Positions 35,924 to 43,016 of a DNA stretch of 64,000 nt are shown here, one piece after another. Every line of letters begins with the position of its first letter. The stretch's first letter is position 1. A program made the position numbers and the translations under genes. Below the pieces are notes generated by a model, which did not search any database, was not told where the DNA came from, and worked only from the letters and a program-made list of their open reading frames with translations. The stretch comes from Vitrella brassicaformis CCMP3155 (lineage: Eukaryota; Protista; Chromerida). Location: assembly GCA_001179505.1 (NCBI GenBank), contig CDMY01000385.1, forward strand, positions 248,001-312,000, given 5' to 3'.

Positions 35924-36043
35924 CGTCCTCAACTCGCTTGACTGAGGCGGCTGAACGGCCTCATCTTCAACGACAGCATCCAAACCTCCCTCAAGCTCGC
36001 AAGCTCGCAGTTTGCTCCCACTGCTCGCCTCGTCGCGTTCGCG

Positions 36044-37185
36044 ATGCGGCTCCATCTTGTTATTTGCGTGTGCTTCATCGCGGCAGCATGCTGCTTCCGG
36101 CCTCCTGCAGCTCGTCCTGCAGCAAAAGTCCGCAGCCTCATCGCTCCATCATCTGTGCGCCTCGCTGCGCAGCCGGCCGTCACTGCTGCTGCTGCTCCAA
36201 ATGAGCTGCCGGAGATGGTATCTGAAACCCCTGGCCTCGGGGATGTCCTGAAGGACCAGACATTTTATCGTGCTGGGAGCGGCGAGCCCGTCCAAGTGAA
36301 AGACCTGCTGGAGGAAGGGAAGCCGGCCATTGTTGTCTTCCTCCGGCATCTGGGTGAGTTGCTTGCACTGGATGGGGGCCTCATTGATGCGTGGGAGATA
36401 TATGTGCCCTCGATCCTGCTGCCGTGGGTCAGGCTGAGTGTACTGCTGGCAGCTGATGGAGGAGTTGACGGCGGCGCTTCCGGCCCTTGAGCGCGCCAGA
36501 GTGACTCTTCTCGCTGTCAGCATCGGCACTCCTGACAAGGCCAAGAAGCTGGTGGATGATCTGGGCTACCTCAATGACCAGATCTTGTTCGTTGACATCC
36601 CTCCTGACCTCAAGTGAGTGAATGTGAGGGGATGAGATGAGTGAGAGAGAACACATGATCCATCCATCACTCGCCATCCATCTGCCGACCGACTGGGACG
36701 GCGTGTTTCCTTCCTTCTGGTTTTGCTTTGCCTGTGTGTCAGGGCCTACCGAGCGGTTGGCCTCCTTCCCTCGTTCTTCACGAGGCCTCGTCGGGTCCCA
36801 CCCGATCTAGGTGGCCCCTTGCAGCTGCTGAACCCATTCCGATTCCAGGAGAATATCCGTGTCATCCGGGAGCAGTTCGACGCCTTTCTGCCGCGGAAGG
36901 AAATCGCTGACAAATGGCGCCCCCGCCCCTACGCACCCACACAGGTAGACGCGTATAGCCGCCCTCACGCACCGCACATGATGCGATTTCCATTGTGGTG
37001 TACGCTATGCCCCGTCGTGTGTTGCGTGTATCGCCCAGGTCAAGGCGGTATCCCAGCAAGGTGGCGCTTTTGTCTACGACTCGAAGGGAGAGCTGATCTT
37101 CGCTTCTCGCGATCGCATACCTCCTGAGTATGTGCCTGTGCCTGAGCTTCTCGACATTGTGGGCGTCAAGACAGCTGCTGCATAA
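36044..37185 (+). CDS. AhpC/TSA-2 (PRXL2/SelU-like) thioredoxin-fold selenoprotein with UxxC; signal peptide plus Phe-initiated plastid transit peptide; 4 exons
   Basis: Exons are 36044-36353, 36433-36613, 36743-36944 and 37039-37185. The splice ctg g|gc TGA gtg tac tgc gives VVFLRHLG-U-VY-C-WQ. The frame stays open through VSIGTPDKA and QQGGAFVYD to TAA at 37183. Confidence 0.9.
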
Positions 37186-37353
37186 GCTGTGGGTGTGTCG
37201 TGTGTGGTTTTTCCGCTGTGGGGGCTCTGCTGATGGCAGAGAGAGATGATCCCTGATGGCCAGGCGAGATAGACGGACCGCATTTGTTTTGGCTGAGTGA
37301 GAGGCATGGCGTGCAGCCTTGCCCGTGTGCTGTGCATGTGTGTGTGCCCTTCT

Positions 37354-37404
37354 GTGACGGCTGGTCGACAAGTCCATGTGTCTGTGGAATCGGTCTGGCC
37401 TGAG
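37354..37404 (+). promoter_or_regulatory. Putative SECIS element (type II, GUGA...UGAG core)
   Basis: GUGA at 37354 is followed by a stem ggcuggucga/ucgg-u-cuggcc (10 bp with G-U pairs and one bulge), unpaired AA at 37370-37371, an apical mini-helix ucca/ugga, and UGAG at 37401. It lies in the 3' UTR of the UGA-containing gene. The outer helix I is weak by eye. Confidence 0.7.
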
Positions 37405-37617
37405 AGTGTCTCGCTCCCACTGATCTCCTGTGCCGGCGGGGGAGGGAGTGCAGGCAGGGGCGCACCACTGTGCTCTGGGGTGTGCTGTGTGGACACGCTT
37501 CTCGCCAATCTAAATGCATTCATTCATTCACTGTCAGGTCACCATGTAGACGTGTAGCGGAAAAAACCCCAGAGAGATCCGCACATATCATTAATCACGT
37601 CCTTTCACTGACCTAGC

Positions 37618-40249
37618 TTAGCTGGGCAGCTGCACTCTCCCCTTCCCTCCCTTCAGGGAGCTCTTCTTCAGGAACCTCATCTTCCGTTTGGTCATGCCCT
37701 TCGGCATTTGCAGCTGGCCCATCTGGCTGCCAACCTCGCTGTCAAGCCCCTCCTCAATGTCGTCACCATCAGCATCCTCCCCTCGCCCAAGGCCGAGCTG
37801 CTCCCGCTCCTTCACAATGGCCAGCAGCCCATCGTCGTCATCACCTTCATTGTCAGCCACATCTCTCCCGCCATCCTCCCCCTCTGCCAAGCCCCTCCAC
37901 CCCGACTCCGCTGATGGCGGCATCTCCACATGTCTCAGCTTGCCGGTGCAGAAGTGCTGCACCACCATCCTTGCCGTTCGGAAGAGGTCCGGCTGCCCGC
38001 CTTTGCCCCCACTGTGGTACCCTCGCACGTGGGCCAGCGCCGTCAGGAAGGTCTGCGCGTCCACCCTGCCGGTGCGCAGAAATGAGCGCTGAAGGGCATC
38101 GAGCATGGGCTGATGCGCGGCCAGGTGCCGCCCTCCCTGCTGCTGGTGTGTGTCGCTGCTGTCTTGGTCGCGTGTTGGGAGGGCTTCCGGTAGGTAAGTA
38201 GCGAGCAGCTCGGGCGTGATCTTGTCGCAGACCAGCTGGACGGGGGGGAGAAAGTCGCCCCTGATGCATACATAAGGGACAGCCAGAAAGAAACGCATCT
38301 GCACTAGGTAGATACTCTCTTGTGCCAGGAGGTGGATCTACCTGAGCGATTCGACAGGAAGCACCCCGTTTATGACCAAAGCGGCCTTCGACGCGACGAT
38401 CGACGGAAAGACCAAACCTGCACACCGCACATATTCAATGCAACACATCCATCCATTCTGCACGTATCAGGGAATGCACACACCACACTGGTTTGTGCAC
38501 TTTGTCTGATGTGACCCTACATTACCTGGGCAGTCGCAGATGATGATCTGGTAAGCGGGCAGGTGGAAGGTCTGGAAGTGCTTGGTCTTGCCGGGGGTGC
38601 GGCTGACCGCCACCCTCTTGGCCTTCACAAGCGCATTGATGAGGCTGCTCTTGCCCACGTTCGGGTAGCCCACCATGCCCACCGTGTACATCTCCTCTTC
38701 TGCAGCACCGCCCTCCCTCCCTCCCATGTCCTCCTTCCTCAGCCCTGCCACCCAGGTTTTGAGGTACTGCAGCAGCTGCTCGCAGCTGAGGACGTCGGTG
38801 CCATCCCCGACGTATACCTCGTCCTCCAGGTTGCCGTAGCCCGTGTTGATGTCGAGATCCAGGTCGGCCAAGAACTGGTCGGACGGGGCGAGGGGCTGGG
38901 GGTGGTTGGAGGGGCCCGCACCAGGCGATGGGGATGACGATGGATGGTGGAGGCGCGCGGGGTCGTCCTTGACGGAGAGGCCGGAGCGGCGTAGCTCACG
39001 CAAGGCCGAGAAGAAGATCACCGGCACGCCCTGACCAAGGCAGAGAGGTTGGGTGCGTCCGAATGTGTGTGACACGCATGTGTGAGTGTCAGATACCCAC
39101 CTGCTTTTGGAAGTAGTGGACCCACTGTCTCCTGATGTCCCTGGAGAGGAAGTCGGCCTTGTTGAGCACCAGCAGGGAGTGCTTGCCGGTGTTCATCTCC
39201 TTGACGTACTTCTCCAGGTCCCCACACCGGTAGAACAGGGGGTGCCTGGCGTCGCATATCTGGAGGACGATGCGGCTCCGCTCAATGACCCGCCACAGCT
39301 GCCGCCACACCTCGATGTTCTTCTCATACGGCGTCATCACCTGGCCCTGCGCCTCCTCAATGTGCGCCAGACGACGCCGCCAGGAGAGGAAACTCTGCTG
39401 CTCGAGACGGTCGAGCTCCGCCGCACTGATGCCGCCAGACCCCTCCTTTGGGCCCTTGCTGTCCTTCCTGCGTCTGGGAGTGTGCCGAGACTGTGGGTAT
39501 CGTGGTCCTGGGGCTGGGTAGGGGGGTTGAGCTGGCTGAGAAGGGGGCGAGGATGCGGTCGCCACTTGATCTTTTGCCGCGTTGGTGGGACTATCAGCAG
39601 CCGCATCAGCATCCTCCGATGGCTCGTCGTCCTCGCTCTCGTCCTCATCATGCGCATCCTCACCCTCCTCACCTTCTGATGCGCCGTCGAGGCCCTCGTC
39701 GCCGCCGAGATCTCCGCCATCGATGTCAGACTCATCGACATACTCATCATCGAACACATCGTCATCCTCACGGTCGTCACCGTTGGCATGTGGCGCAGGC
39801 AAGGGCTCAGCAGCAGCTGCTTGGCTGTCGGGAGGGGGGTGGTCGGCCGCGTCACTCGCTTGCTGCTGATGCCTCTTGAGGAAGTTCATGGGCCGTCTTG
39901 GTATTGGCACACTGATCTCGCTGACGCCGCCATACAGCCGTCCCTTTGGCGCCGCCCTGGGGTGCTGCTGCGGGTGGTCTAACGACACGACCATGGTGCT
40001 GCGGTGCACCTCCACCTCATGCTCCTCCTTCTGCGCCAGCACCGACTCTAGGTACTCATCTAATGCATTCCGCTCGATGATGGACTTGAGGTTCTTGGTG
40101 CCGCCAGTGGCTGATGTGCTGTGGAGATTGAGGTCAAGGCTGTGCTTGCCAGCGGCACGGCTATCGATGGCTCGGCGCTCCTTGTCGCGAACAAGCGCTT
40201 TGCCGAGTGCGCCGCTCGAACCACTCTTCTTTCCTTGAGGCTTCGGCAT
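37618..40249 (-). CDS. LSG1: Large-subunit GTPase 1 (circularly permuted GTPase)
   Basis: Motifs are LGKAL, MTPYEKNIEVWRQLWRVIERS, DARHPLFYRC.DLE.YV, LVLNKADF, VGMVGYPNVGKSSLINAL, VSRTPGKTKHFQT and DCPGLVFPS. Confidence 0.97.
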
Positions 40250-40434: not shown

Positions 40435-43016
40435 ATGGGGCGGTGGCTGAATGTGGACATCATTGTCAACGATTTGCTGTACGTCTGCAAAGCATGCCTA
40501 ATCATCACGGGTGTGTGCGTCGGCGGGCTGTTCTTCATAACAATAGGATGGATAATATGGCCGGTCAGTCAGCACGCACACAGTTGTCACATCAATCAGG
40601 GACGCCAGAGCCCTCAACACGACTCTTCTGTAGCTCTGTGGACTCTGTGTTGTCATTTCCAGGTGATTTATGTCGTGTCTGAGGCTCTCTGCTACTGGAG
40701 ATGGCGATACCGACTGGCGCTGCTCAAGTCCCTCCCCCCCTACCGGCCGCCCGTCAGCCAGGAGTGGATCGAGATGTGCGAGACGGCCATGCTGGAGGAC
40801 CACACGGCCGAGGAGCTGCGGATGCTGCTGTATTATTGCTTCTACTGTGTCTGGCCGGAGCAGATCGGCCGGAGGGACGTGGAGAGCTTCTTCATGTACC
40901 ACTTCCCCACGTCATGGGAGCACATTGAGTGGTTTGTGGACCAGCTTGAGGACAAAATGGGTCAGTTAGCGCGGCAGAGGGGAGAACAAGGGCTCGCAGA
41001 GCCGACAAAGGATGGATGAGCAGTGAATGGATACATACGTGTGGGTGTGGGCGATTGCTGCCATGTCATTCATCGGTTTGCAGGCATCCGTTTCCCTCAT
41101 GTTCGAAGCACGACGATTCCGTCGCAGTGTCCGCGGACGGGCGACCCCATGCTGTTGCAGGACGCCTATTCGCGCATCCACGGGTACCGATTCGGTATCC
41201 ACCCCATCAAGGCCATCTACCGGCCCCTGCCGTTCCTCATAGCCATCAACCTGTGGCAGAGCTTCAGCCTATGGATACTCAAACGATACGGATTCAAGAC
41301 ATACGAGTAAGTAAGCAACGGACGGAGGGAGGGAGGGAGGGAGGGAGGGGGCAAACAGGGCGGGCACTCGGTGGGATGGATGGATGGATGTCTTGGTTTT
41401 GGCCGGTGTGGTTGGTCTGCTGGGGCTTCTTGTGCAGAGTGCCGACGAATCAGTTTGTGCGTTTCCACATGTGGATGCCGCCGAAGCACTTCGACGTCCG
41501 GCGCGACCGAGAGCGCAGTGTGCCAATCGTCGTCCTGCACGGCCTCGGTTTCGGCCTCATCAACTATGTCTTCCCCACACTCAAGCTCATGCAGCTGATG
41601 CGCACTCAGTCCCCACGGCCCCGGGGCTACGGCCGGCGATTCGCCCCGGCCCCCGTGTGTCCTCGGCCGGTGATCGTGTGCGAGATGAGCATGATCGGGG
41701 GTTATCCCAGCGGTGTGGCCGACTTCCGGCAGCTGCCGACAATGCCCCAGATCGCCCATTATGTGGCCCAGTTCGTCTACGCCCACTTCTCGCCGCCCAC
41801 CCCATTCGTCCCGGAAGAGGAGTCCGAGACCATCGGCGGGGGTGGTGCCCTGTCGATCTCCCTCCCCCATGGGCCATCACCTGGCTGGGAGGACGTCAAG
41901 TCCGCCCTCACAGGCACGGCATCGACGGCCATCGGCACGGACTCTCCGTCGCCTCTGTCGTCGGTGGTGTCGCCCCACACGGATGCCGAGGGGGAGTTGC
42001 AGAAGCGGGGGACGTTCTTCAGCGCTCACAGTGGCACGCTGACGACTCAGAACACTCTGGACGAGGACAGCCCGACACTGCGGCGGCGTGAGGAGGTGGA
42101 GAGGCAGAGGGAGAAGAAGCGTCGGGCTGAGGAGGCCCGGTCGCTGTTCGGGTGCGGCTATCGCAGGAAGCGCCAGGTGGACAAGGAGGAGGAACACGTG
42201 GCCACGCTCCGCTTCGTCCCCGACCACCGGAGAAAGGGCGTACACATGGATGTCGTCTCACACAGGTGAGGTGCACTCGGGTAGTGAGTGGGAAAAGGGC
42301 TCGCTCGCTTTGCTTGCTCATCTTATCTTGCTCGTCGCGCTTCTCTCTCTCTCTCTCTCTCTCTGTGGGGGGGGGGGGGGGNNNNNNNNNNNNNNNNNNN
42401 NNNNNNNNNNNNNNNNNNNNNNNNNNNNNNNNNNNNNNNNNNNNNNNNNNNNNNNNNNNNNNNNNNNNNNNNNNNNNNNNNNNNNNNNNNNNNNNNNNNN
42501 NNNNNNNNNNNNNNNNNNNNNNNNNNNNNNNNNNNNNNNNNNNNNNNNNNNNNNNNNNNNNNNNNNNNNNNNNNNNNNNNNNNNNNNNNNNNNNNNNNNN
42601 NNNNNNNNNNNNNNNNNNNNNNNNNNNNNNNNNNNNNNNNNNNNNNNNNNNNNNNNNNNNNNNNNNNNNNNNNNNNNNNNNGGGGGGGGGGGGGGGTCTG
42701 TCTTATATTTATCAGTTTCGGCACGGCGATAACGTCGATACTGCAAAAGCAGTACCCGTCGTTGATTCGGCGGTGTGTGCTGGTCGACCCCGTATGTTTT
42801 TTCGTGCTGCCCTTGAAGAAGGCGCAGCTGGGGTACCTCTACCCCTGGGAGATCAACCTGGTGGACCCACCTCACGGGAGGGGCAAGGGGCTCTTCGCCC
42901 TCATCAGGAGACCCCTCGAGAAACTTTATGACTTCAGGTCTGTCACTCAGGAGACGGCAGGCATTCAAATATCTGTCTGTGGGGGATGCATCGCCGGAAG
43001 AAAACCATGGATGGTG

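What the first reader, a model, noticed from the sequence alone, without database searches (positions are those of the whole stretch)
36044..37185. Hidden selenoprotein: in-frame UGA in a UxxC redox motif, invisible to the ORF track
Seen in sequence: exon 1 ends ...FLRHL G(g|gc) and exon 2 continues TGA-GTG-TAC-TGC, giving G-U-V-Y-C. The frame then stays open for about 140 codons through three exons, including the family motif QQGGAFV. Established: AhpC-TSA_2/PRXL2/SelU proteins carry CxxC at exactly this position (F.RH..C..C), and some homologues use Sec there. Inference: this UGA is selenocysteine. Gene finders would truncate the gene or invent an intron to skip it.
Basis: partly seen in the sequence, partly recalled or inferred. 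Interest (0 to 1): 0.88.

Follow-up and report, generated by a model that had tools for sequence, protein, structure and literature searches.

The report
Misannotated SelU-type selenoprotein gene in Vitrella
This four-exon gene of the alga Vitrella brassicaformis almost certainly makes a selenium-containing redox enzyme of the known SelU/PRXL2 family; the public annotation reads its selenocysteine codon as a stop and cuts off the front 40% of the protein, so this is a solid correction rather than a new kind of protein.

Summary
The window is Vitrella brassicaformis CCMP3155 contig CDMY01000385.1. Transcript contigs from three RNA runs and four further assemblies show exactly the predicted GT..AG junctions, with TGA 36435-36437 unchanged. 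The result is a 279-codon ORF reading ...VVFLRHLG-U-VYC-WQL....

- **Family:** the part after the UGA passes Pfam PF13911 (AhpC-TSA_2).
- **Sec position:** the UGA aligns with the first Cys of the LLRHFG-CxxC-WEL motif of plant chloroplast AAED1/PRXL2 proteins.
- **Paralogue:** a second Vitrella gene has the same exon layout, the same phase-1 intron just before the codon, and the same TGA. Both sides of the codon are under equal purifying selection.
- **SECIS:** both genes carry a type-2 SECIS-like hairpin with a GUGA core in the 3'UTR (here 37354-37404). It is the only such hit with a helix 2 of 10 bp or more in 128 kb scanned. Rfam's SECIS_1 model misses this gene's hairpin and scores the paralogue's only weakly.
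- **Public models:** CEM08632.1 starts at the first Met after the UGA (168 aa). The paralogue's model skips the UGA with an invented intron.

Sec-containing SelU is already known in fish, birds, invertebrates, green algae and diatoms. The scan had already found the paralogue on other DNA. Verdict: a new member of a known kind. The organism's Sec machinery and actual selenium incorporation were not tested.

The parts
36018..36043 (+). 5'UTR as far as the transcript contigs reach; 36044 is the first ATG of the mRNA
   Evidence: RNA contig X1 record 1 starts at 36018. The first ATG of L006 is the CDS start.
36044..36353 (+). Exon 1 (CDS codons 1-103 plus 1 nt). It encodes a hydrophobic signal-peptide-like start (MRLHLVICVCFIAAACC), then F-RPP and an Ala/Ser/Pro/Arg-rich transit-peptide-like stretch, then the first strands of the thioredoxin fold, ending ...AIVVFLRHLG
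   Evidence: Kyte-Doolittle mean of residues 3-18 is 2.67. Residues 19-58 hold 5 K+R against 2 D+E.
36354..36432 (+). Intron 1 (79 nt, GT..AG, phase 1), inside the Gly codon just before the UGA. The paralogue has an intron at the same position.
   Evidence: The joint is seen in 3 RNA runs.
36433..36613 (+). Exon 2 (181 nt, the same length as in the paralogue): GC-TGA-GTG-TAC-TGC..., the UxxC redox centre and helix 1 onward
   Evidence: The piece gives weak Pfam hits to AhpC-TSA and AhpC-TSA_2.
36435..36437 (+). In-frame TGA, read as selenocysteine 105. Together with Cys108 (36444-36446) it forms U-V-Y-C.
   Evidence: Unchanged in RNA and DNA contigs. It aligns with the first Cys of the plant CxxC and with the TGA of the paralogue.
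36614..36742 (+). Intron 2 (129 nt, GT..AG)
36743..36944 (+). Exon 3
36945..37038 (+). Intron 3 (94 nt, GT..AG)
   Evidence: the joint is reported with a 3-nt ambiguity
37039..37185 (+). Exon 4 coding part with the family motif QQGGAFV; stop TAA at 37183-37185
37186..37528 (+). 3'UTR; the transcript contigs end at about 37514-37530
37354..37404 (+). SECIS-like type-2 hairpin. GUGA core at 37354-37357; 10-bp helix 2 (37359-37368 with 37390-37400, one bulged U); unpaired AA at 37370-37371, 12 nt after the core; 5-bp helix 3 with a 6-nt loop; 3' GA at 37402-37403. It lies 168 nt after the stop and 693 nt after the UGA in the mRNA.
   Evidence: It has the same architecture and the same core flanks as the paralogue's element.

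Best explanation
This is a nuclear, four-exon gene of Vitrella brassicaformis for a thioredoxin-fold oxidoreductase of the SELENOU/PRXL2 (Pfam AhpC-TSA_2) family. The first residue of its CxxC redox centre is selenocysteine, encoded by UGA (U105-V-Y-C108).

Inferred mechanism:
1. Cytosolic ribosomes reach UGA105. The type-2, GUGA-core SECIS hairpin in the 3'UTR, about 690 nt downstream, recruits the Sec-insertion machinery, so Sec-tRNA is inserted instead of terminating.
2. The 279-residue precursor carries a signal peptide followed by F-RPP and a transit-peptide-like stretch. It is probably imported into the complex plastid, like its nearest Cys-containing relatives, the plant chloroplast AAED1 proteins.
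3. In the mature enzyme, Sec105 is the attacking nucleophile and Cys108 resolves it through a selenenylsulfide. This would reduce a peroxide or disulfide substrate.

Shown here: the gene structure, retention of the UGA in mRNA, family membership, the alignment of U to Cys, the paralogue, the selection on both sides of the UGA, and the presence and shape of the hairpin. Inferred: actual Sec insertion, plastid location, and the chemistry and substrate.
For: - **Splicing and UGA:** all three junctions and an unchanged TGA are seen in contigs of three RNA runs from two studies, and a DNA run is identical. The full spliced CDS is present in three independent transcript assemblies, L004, L006 and L007.
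- **Organism and public model:** the post-UGA product is CEM08632.1 / A0A0G4F7W0 of Vitrella brassicaformis CCMP3155, 168 aa, starting at MEEL.
- **Family:** PF13911 scores 41.6 bits against a cut-off of 27, E 1.8e-10, covering profile positions 1-113 of 114. The nearest kin outside Vitrella are plant 'thioredoxin-like protein AAED1, chloroplastic'/PRXL2.
- **Sec position:** U aligns with the first Cys of LLRHFG-CxxC-WEL in 7 of 7 plant proteins. The roughly 45 residues upstream of the UGA align as well.
- **Paralogue** (L001/L008, CDMY01000635.1): it has ...VVFLRHLG-TGA-PFC-WQY, the same phase-1 intron before the TGA, and the same 181-nt exon 2.
- **Selection:** pN/pS is 0.31/0.62 upstream and 0.35/0.68 downstream of the UGA, while synonymous sites are near saturation and the TGA is kept.
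- **SECIS:** there is exactly one hit in the 3'UTR, with a 10-bp helix 2. Only 2.7% of shuffled UTRs gave any hit of 9 bp or more. Only three RUGA-core hits occur in 128 kb of window sequence, and this is the only one with 10 bp or more.
- **Paralogue SECIS:** a matching element (GUGA, AA, 10-11 bp helix 2) with the same core flanks CYGUGACGG...CCYGAGAG. Five of the 10 helix-2 pairs are changed on both sides yet still pair. Rfam SECIS_1 aligns to it full-length at 14.9 bits.
- **Literature:** GUGA_AA SECIS elements and Sec-form SelU in algae are documented (PMC3473315, PMC2375036).
Against: - Rfam's SECIS_1 model gives no hit for this gene's hairpin, even on a 111-nt stretch at E up to 10. The paralogue's hit is far below the gathering score (14.9 against 35 bits).
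- The hairpin folds no better than shuffled sequence (z = +0.38 for the 91-nt stretch; +0.28 for the 81-nt stretch). Its helix 1 is weak.
- Both hairpins were found by a scan that demands pairing, so the compensatory changes are partly built in by the search.
- No tRNA-Sec lies in the window. The organism's Sec machinery could not be searched with these tools.
- No Sec-form SelU sequence from another organism was retrieved to align U with U.
- No published Vitrella selenoproteome was found.
- The only support for other selenoproteins in this genome is unchecked notes from the same scan.
Confidence: 0.9

Rival explanations
1. The UGA is decoded, but not as selenocysteine. Low-level near-cognate readthrough would insert Cys, Trp or Arg, and the hairpin would be incidental.
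For: Rfam does not recognise this gene's hairpin. Its folding energy is unremarkable. The Sec machinery was not shown here.
Against: - The UGA sits exactly on the catalytic first Cys of the CxxC, the classic Sec/Cys exchange position of this family (PMC3473315).
- It has been kept as TGA in two paralogues whose synonymous sites are nearly saturated. A TGC or TGT codon would serve far better if Cys were intended.
- Both paralogues keep the same SECIS-shaped element with identical core flanks.
Confidence: 0.05
2. The UGA is a genuine stop and the public model is right. The mRNA would yield a 104-residue N-terminal peptide and/or the 168-residue protein started at Met112.
For: The public annotation CEM08632.1 starts at Met112. 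TGA does end a neighbouring annotated Vitrella gene (L008 6615-7799).
Against: - Either product would be a broken thioredoxin fold: one without the body, the other without the first strands and the redox centre.
- The region upstream of the UGA is as constrained as the region downstream, and it aligns with the plant proteins.
- Met112 is an internal codon with no targeting sequence, whereas the upstream ATG is the first in the mRNA.
- The AlphaFold model of the 168-aa product alone was poor (pLDDT 44). This is weak evidence, because the alignment was shallow.
Confidence: 0.03
3. The TGA is an assembly or sequencing error, a strain-specific nonsense mutation, or the gene is a decaying pseudogene.
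For: None found.
Against: - The sequence is identical in the genome assembly, in a DNA run, and in RNA contigs of three runs from two studies, as well as in further transcript assemblies.
- The gene is expressed and correctly spliced.
- The paralogue has the same TGA.
- Both sides of the TGA show purifying selection.
Confidence: 0.01

Closest known systems
Selenoprotein U (SELENOU1/PRXL2A, SELENOU2/PRXL2C = AAED1, SELENOU3/PRXL2B). Sec forms are reported in fish, birds, platypus, marine invertebrates, Chlamydomonas, Ostreococcus and Thalassiosira (PMC3473315, PMC2375036, PMC2397514, bioRxiv 10.1101/2025.05.29.656587).
   Same: The Pfam family is the same (PF13911). It is a thioredoxin-fold protein with Sec or Cys in the N-terminal redox motif, the QQGG motif near the C-terminus, and a SECIS in the 3'UTR. 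GUGA_AA SECIS cores are also reported for a sponge SelU3 (PMC3473315).
   Different: This is a chromerid (alveolate) host, for which no selenoproteome paper was found. Sequence identity to any non-Vitrella protein retrieved is only about 30%. Placement among SelU1, SelU2 and SelU3 was not resolved, and no Sec-form reference was aligned here.
Plant 'thioredoxin-like protein AAED1, chloroplastic' (for example P0005 from Pistacia, P0021 from Rosa, P0043 from Vitis)
   Same: These are the best non-Vitrella matches. They align over the whole mature protein, including LLRHFG-CxxC-WEL and QQGGxFV. Their names mark them as organelle-targeted, and the Vitrella protein has a plastid-type leader.
   Different: The plant proteins have Cys where Vitrella has Sec. 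They use a simple transit peptide rather than a signal peptide plus transit peptide. The Vitrella proteins carry two insertions, after FFT and before KW.
Vitrella paralogue on CDMY01000635.1 (transcripts L001/L002; public model CEM27585.1; earlier scan finding s1-235823)
   Same: Protein identity is about 50% after the UGA and 41% before it. It has the same four exons, the same phase-1 intron before the TGA, the same TGA, the same F-RPP leader motif and the same type of GUGA SECIS.
   Different: Its motif is U-P-F-C instead of U-V-Y-C. Its public model skips the UGA by an invented intron rather than truncating. Its 3'UTR is interrupted by a poly-C tract and an assembly gap.
Prostamide/prostaglandin F synthase PRXL2B, solved structures 9usa and 9us9
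   Same: This is the only solved relative found by sequence. The C-terminal QQGG...DY.P region aligns.
   Different: The match is very weak (E 0.07) and covers 41 residues only. PRXL2B is a Cys enzyme with a known prostaglandin substrate that is not expected in an alga.

Membership tests
SELENOU / PRXL2 (Pfam PF13911 AhpC-TSA_2) | Match to the family profile above Pfam's gathering score | tested here: met
   P0001 (residues 112-279 of the protein) scores 41.6 bits against a cut-off of 27, E 1.8e-10, covering profile positions 1-113 of 114. The paralogue scores 37.2 bits.
SELENOU / PRXL2 (Pfam PF13911 AhpC-TSA_2) | Redox motif C/U-x-x-C right after the strand ...(L/V)RH.G, at the start of helix 1 | tested here: met
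   VVFLRHLG-U-VYC-WQL aligns column for column with VVALLRHFG-C-xxC-WEL of seven plant AAED1 proteins.
SELENOU / PRXL2 (Pfam PF13911 AhpC-TSA_2) | Conserved C-terminal QQGG-x-F strand and the overall length of the mature domain | tested here: met
   QQG is invariant across both Vitrella proteins and all plant rows; the fourth residue is Gly except in the paralogue, which has Ala. The mature part of about 220 residues aligns end to end.
SELENOU / PRXL2 (Pfam PF13911 AhpC-TSA_2) | Sec at the same residue as in established Sec-form SelU proteins | not tested
   No Sec-form SelU sequence from another organism could be retrieved because the protein searches were exhausted. Only alignment to Cys forms and to the Vitrella paralogue was done.
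Eukaryotic selenoprotein gene (UGA recoded by a 3'UTR SECIS) | In-frame UGA present in the mature mRNA, with coding constraint on both sides | tested here: met
   Searches show the mRNA. pN/pS is 0.31/0.62 upstream and 0.35/0.68 downstream.
Eukaryotic selenoprotein gene (UGA recoded by a 3'UTR SECIS) | SECIS element in the 3'UTR: RUGA core, 3' GA, helix 2 of about 9-12 bp, unpaired AA 10-13 nt after the core | tested here: inconclusive
   All motif and geometry features are present at 37354-37404 and are rare by chance. They are shared with the paralogue. However, Rfam RF00031 gives no hit here and only 14.9 bits (gathering score 35) on the paralogue.
Eukaryotic selenoprotein gene (UGA recoded by a 3'UTR SECIS) | Organism has tRNA-Sec, eEFSec, SBP2, SPS2, PSTK and SepSecS | not testable with these tools
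   There is no tRNA in the window and no genome-wide access. The only indirect hints are unchecked scan notes of other UGA+SECIS genes in this genome.
Eukaryotic selenoprotein gene (UGA recoded by a 3'UTR SECIS) | Selenium actually incorporated at the UGA | not testable with these tools
   This needs 75Se labelling or mass spectrometry.

The most novel reading that the evidence does not exclude
Vitrella keeps two Sec-containing copies of the plastid-type AAED1/PRXL2 enzyme, both routed through the ER into a complex red-derived plastid. They would be among the first documented plastid-resident selenoproteins of an apicomplexan relative. The shared GUGA-core, Rfam-invisible SECIS would be the standard chromerid form. 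If so, chromerid and perhaps other alveolate selenoproteomes are systematically under-called by current tools.
Probability: 0.45. Interest if true: 0.4.

Novelty: new member of a known kind. Interest (0 to 1): 0.3.

Why it matters
It corrects two public Vitrella protein models. CEM08632.1 is truncated and CEM27585.1 is mis-spliced, so both lack the catalytic centre. UniProt and EukProt copies inherit the error.

It adds SelU/PRXL2 to the little-studied selenoproteome of chromerids, the photosynthetic relatives of apicomplexan parasites, a group reported to have lost most of its selenoproteins (PMC2375036).

It also gives a concrete example of a GUGA-core SECIS that the Rfam model misses, which is useful for tuning selenoprotein finders. 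It does not change what is known about the family or about Sec decoding.

Tried and rejected
- **Rfam, gathering thresholds, whole window:** nothing.
- **Rfam, E up to 10, on 36900-37800 and on 37325-37435 alone:** no SECIS hit for this gene. The other hits (snoR11, 7SK and similar) are noise.
- **Exon-by-exon Pfam:** only sub-threshold hits. Family membership became testable only once the public 168-aa product, P0001, was recovered.
- **Word-indexed protein searches with P0001 alone and with a Vitrella-only profile:** these returned only the two Vitrella proteins, so no chromerid, dinoflagellate or diatom orthologues were obtained.
- **Profile including plant rows:** it returned land plants only, because the profile was biased by the plant rows.
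- **Two metagenome-contig scans:** nothing.
- **SECIS in the paralogue's transcript contigs:** none, because those contigs stop at a poly-C tract. The element lies beyond the assembly gap in the genome.
- **MAFFT alignment of the two SECIS elements:** not structure-aware, so pair counts were made from separate folds instead. No covariance model was built.
- **AlphaFold2 of the 168-aa public product with a 10-row alignment:** pLDDT 44, unusable, so no fold search was run.
- **PDB by sequence:** only a weak PRXL2B match.
- **ESM Atlas:** the nearest clusters are short (145-162 aa) AhpC-TSA_2 proteins of diatoms and green algae. This would fit similarly truncated Sec forms, but it is a lead only.
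- **Castellano 2004 SelU paper:** not held in the library.
- **Rejected readings:** sequencing error, RNA editing (no RNA/DNA differences), and an alternative acceptor site (a single joint form in all runs, although contigs can hide rare isoforms).

Full report
**What is in the sequence.**
- From the ATG at 36044 the frame is open to ...TTC CTC CGG CAT CTG G, followed by gtgagt.
- After ...gggtcag the sequence continues GC TGA GTG TAC TGC TGG.
- With two more GT..AG introns the spliced CDS is 840 nt (279 codons plus the TAA stop).
- It has one internal stop, TGA at 36435-36437 (codon 105), in the context FLRHLG-U-VYC-WQL. The terminal stop is TAA at 37183-37185.
- After the UGA the frame runs for 174 codons, somewhat more than the 'about 140' of the finding. 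It includes QQGGAFV in exon 4.

**Is the gene model real?** Yes.
- Public runs were found for the stretch and their contigs laid on it.
- Three RNA runs from two studies each contain one transcript contig with exactly three joints: 36353|36433, 36613|36743 and 36944|37039. All are GT..AG.
- These contigs show no differing letters and no insertions or deletions, so the TGA is in the mature mRNA.
- A DNA run carries the whole stretch unchanged.
- The mRNA runs from at least 36018 to about 37514-37530, so the 3'UTR is about 340 nt.
- Three further transcript assemblies fetched later (L004, L006, L007) contain the complete spliced CDS letter for letter; L005 holds only part of it.
- Only one splice form was seen. 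Contigs can hide rare isoforms.

**Organism and public annotation.**
- An exhaustive HMMER search with the exon-2 piece returned a 168-aa protein, P0001, identical to the spliced product from Met112 onward.
- It is CEM08632.1 / UniProt A0A0G4F7W0, 'unnamed protein product [Vitrella brassicaformis CCMP3155]'.
- Its genomic record is CDMY01000385.1, where the annotated CDS starts at ATGGAGGAGTTG, 412 nt downstream of the true start.
- The public model therefore begins at the first Met after the UGA. It lacks the leader, the first strands of the fold and the redox centre.

**Family.**
- The single exon pieces gave only sub-threshold Pfam hits.
- P0001 passes PF13911 (AhpC-TSA_2) at 41.6 bits against a cut-off of 27, covering almost the whole profile.
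- A profile search found as nearest non-Vitrella relatives the land-plant proteins named 'thioredoxin-like protein AAED1, chloroplastic', 'peroxiredoxin-like 2A/B/C' or 'prostamide/prostaglandin F synthase', at about 30% identity.
- This is the SELENOU/PRXL2 family: SELENOU1 = PRXL2A, SELENOU2 = PRXL2C/AAED1, SELENOU3 = PRXL2B (bioRxiv 10.1101/2025.05.29.656587).
- I aligned the read-through Vitrella protein, with U at the UGA, against seven of these plant proteins in a script. The U falls exactly on the first Cys of VVALLRHFG-C-xx-C-WEL.
- The 45 or so residues encoded upstream of the UGA align with the plant mature N-terminus as well.
- The thioredoxin fold is therefore encoded on both sides of the UGA.

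**A paralogue settles most doubts.**
- The same Vitrella transcriptomes hold a second mRNA (L001/L002) encoding a 280-codon protein. It has ...ALVVFLRHLG-TGA-PFC-WQY at the same place.
- Its genomic locus (L008, CDMY01000635.1) has the same four-exon layout. There is a phase-1 intron in the Gly codon immediately before the TGA, and exon 2 is again 181 nt.
- Its public model, CEM27585.1 (P0004), jumps from ...LKLQTL to IGEPQK. This is an invented intron that removes the UGA region.
- Between the paralogues, synonymous sites are close to saturation (pS 0.62 upstream of the UGA, 0.68 downstream). Non-synonymous differences are about half that (pN 0.31 and 0.35). Both sides are thus under the same protein-level constraint, and the TGA itself is retained.
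- An earlier follow-up of this scan (s1-235823) had already reported that paralogue as a mis-annotated SelU-type selenoprotein. This scan therefore found the same kind of gene before, on other DNA.

**SECIS.**
- Rfam found no SECIS in the window at gathering thresholds, nor at E up to 10 on the 3' region.
- I wrote a simple scan requiring: NUGA, unpaired AA 9-14 nt later, a 3' GA, and a helix 2 of at least 8-9 bp.
- In the 3'UTR it gives exactly one hit: GUGA at 37354-37357, AA at 37370-37371, GA at 37402-03, and a 10-bp helix 2 with one bulged U.
- Only 2.7% of shuffled UTRs gave any hit of 9 bp or more.
- Over both strands of the whole window (128 kb) there are only three hits with an A/G-UGA core. 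This is the only one with 10 bp or more.
- ViennaRNA returns the expected type-2 shape: helix 2, an internal loop with AAG, a 5-bp helix 3 and a 6-nt loop. The energy is no better than that of shuffles (z = +0.38 for the 91-nt stretch; +0.28 for the 81-nt stretch).
- The paralogue's transcript contigs end in a poly-C tract and show no SECIS. In the genome, beyond the assembly gap, the same scan finds GUGA, AA at +13 and a helix 2 of 10-11 bp.
- The two elements share the core flanks CC-Y-GUGACGG ... AAG ... CC-Y-GAGAG and the same architecture. Five of the ten helix-2 pairs differ on both sides while still pairing.
- Rfam's SECIS_1 aligns full-length to the paralogue's element in exactly this register, but at only 14.9 bits (gathering score 35, E 1.6). 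It still misses the element of this gene on a 111-nt stretch.
- GUGA_AA SECIS elements are documented elsewhere (PMC3473315). Unchecked notes of this scan report GUGA cores for several other Vitrella UGA genes.
- I regard the SECIS as probable, not proven. The compensatory changes are partly built in, because the scan demands pairing.

**Leader.**
- The first 17 residues are strongly hydrophobic (mean Kyte-Doolittle 2.67).
- They are followed by F-RPP and a 40-residue stretch rich in Ala, Ser, Thr, Pro and Arg, with hardly any acidic residues.
- The paralogue has ...VSQA-FRPP... at the same place.
- A signal peptide followed by a transit peptide that starts with Phe is, to my knowledge, the usual bipartite plastid-targeting signal in algae with red-derived complex plastids. 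The use of such predictors for chromerids is described in PMC6723311.
- The nearest Cys homologues are named as chloroplast proteins. I infer plastid routing. No predictor was run.

**How it most likely works.**
- *Shown:* an expressed, correctly spliced mRNA with one in-frame UGA on the catalytic Cys position of a PRXL2-type thioredoxin fold, and a SECIS-shaped hairpin 693 nt downstream of it in the mRNA.
- *Inferred, from established knowledge of eukaryotic Sec decoding and of CxxC/UxxC thioredoxin-fold enzymes:* the hairpin recruits SBP2 and eEFSec with Sec-tRNA, so UGA105 is read as Sec. The precursor enters the ER and then the plastid. Sec105 attacks the substrate (a peroxide or disulfide) and Cys108 resolves the selenenylsulfide, which thioredoxin or glutathione then re-reduces. 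The substrate is unknown.

**Rivals.**
- *True stop, with the public model correct.* This would leave two fragments of one fold. It cannot explain the equal constraint on both sides, the alignment of the upstream part to plant proteins, or the paralogue.
- *Readthrough without Sec.* This does not explain why TGA, rather than TGC or TGT, is kept in both paralogues at the catalytic Cys site, together with a matching hairpin.
- *Error or pseudogene.* This is excluded by the agreement of the genome, a DNA run and the transcript assemblies.

**What could not be done.**
- The Sec machinery of Vitrella could not be searched. There is no tRNA in the window, no genome-wide access, and no scan notes on the machinery.
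- No paper linking Vitrella or Chromera to a selenoproteome was found.
- No orthologues from other algae were retrieved. Consequently U was not aligned with the U of an established SelU, and the subfamily (U1, U2 or U3) is unresolved.
- A structure prediction of the truncated public product was too poor to use.

**Verdict.** Sec-form SelU proteins are long known in fish, birds, invertebrates, Chlamydomonas, Ostreococcus and Thalassiosira (PMC3473315, PMC2375036, PMC2397514). This is therefore a new member of a known kind in a lineage without a published selenoproteome, and a clear annotation error. It is not a new mechanism.

Noticed in passing
L008:4001-5840 (CDMY01000635.1) and transcripts L001/L002: A paralogous SelU-type gene has the same in-frame TGA (L001:387-389), a UPFC motif, and a GUGA-core SECIS at L008:5790-5837. 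Its public model CEM27585.1 skips the UGA by an invented intron and is oddly named 'Selenoprotein F/M domain-containing protein' in UniRef.
   Followed up: yes
L008:5385-5730: The paralogue's 3'UTR is interrupted by a poly-C tract followed by an N gap in the assembly. All transcript contigs stop at the same poly-C, so the SECIS is missing from the transcriptome contigs.
   Followed up: partly
window 37503-37700: The convergent neighbour on the minus strand is a GTPase with MMR_HSR1/RsgA-type Pfam hits; its CDS ends at 37618. One of its transcript contigs reaches 37503, so the two mRNAs appear to overlap by about 25 nt at their 3' ends. One RNA contig runs through both genes.
   Followed up: no
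window 20744 (+) and 2650 (+): These are the only two other RUGA-core hits of my SECIS scan (ATGA with AA at +10, and GTGA with AA at +14, each with a 9-bp helix). Both have long or irregular apical parts and were not checked against any UGA-containing ORF.
   Followed up: no
window 42382-42681: A 300-nt run of N (assembly gap).
   Followed up: no
window 37320-37351: A short GT-rich low-complexity stretch (tgtgctgtgcatgtgtgtgtgc) in the 3'UTR attracts pieces of unrelated contigs in all runs. It explains the small depth bumps there.
   Followed up: no
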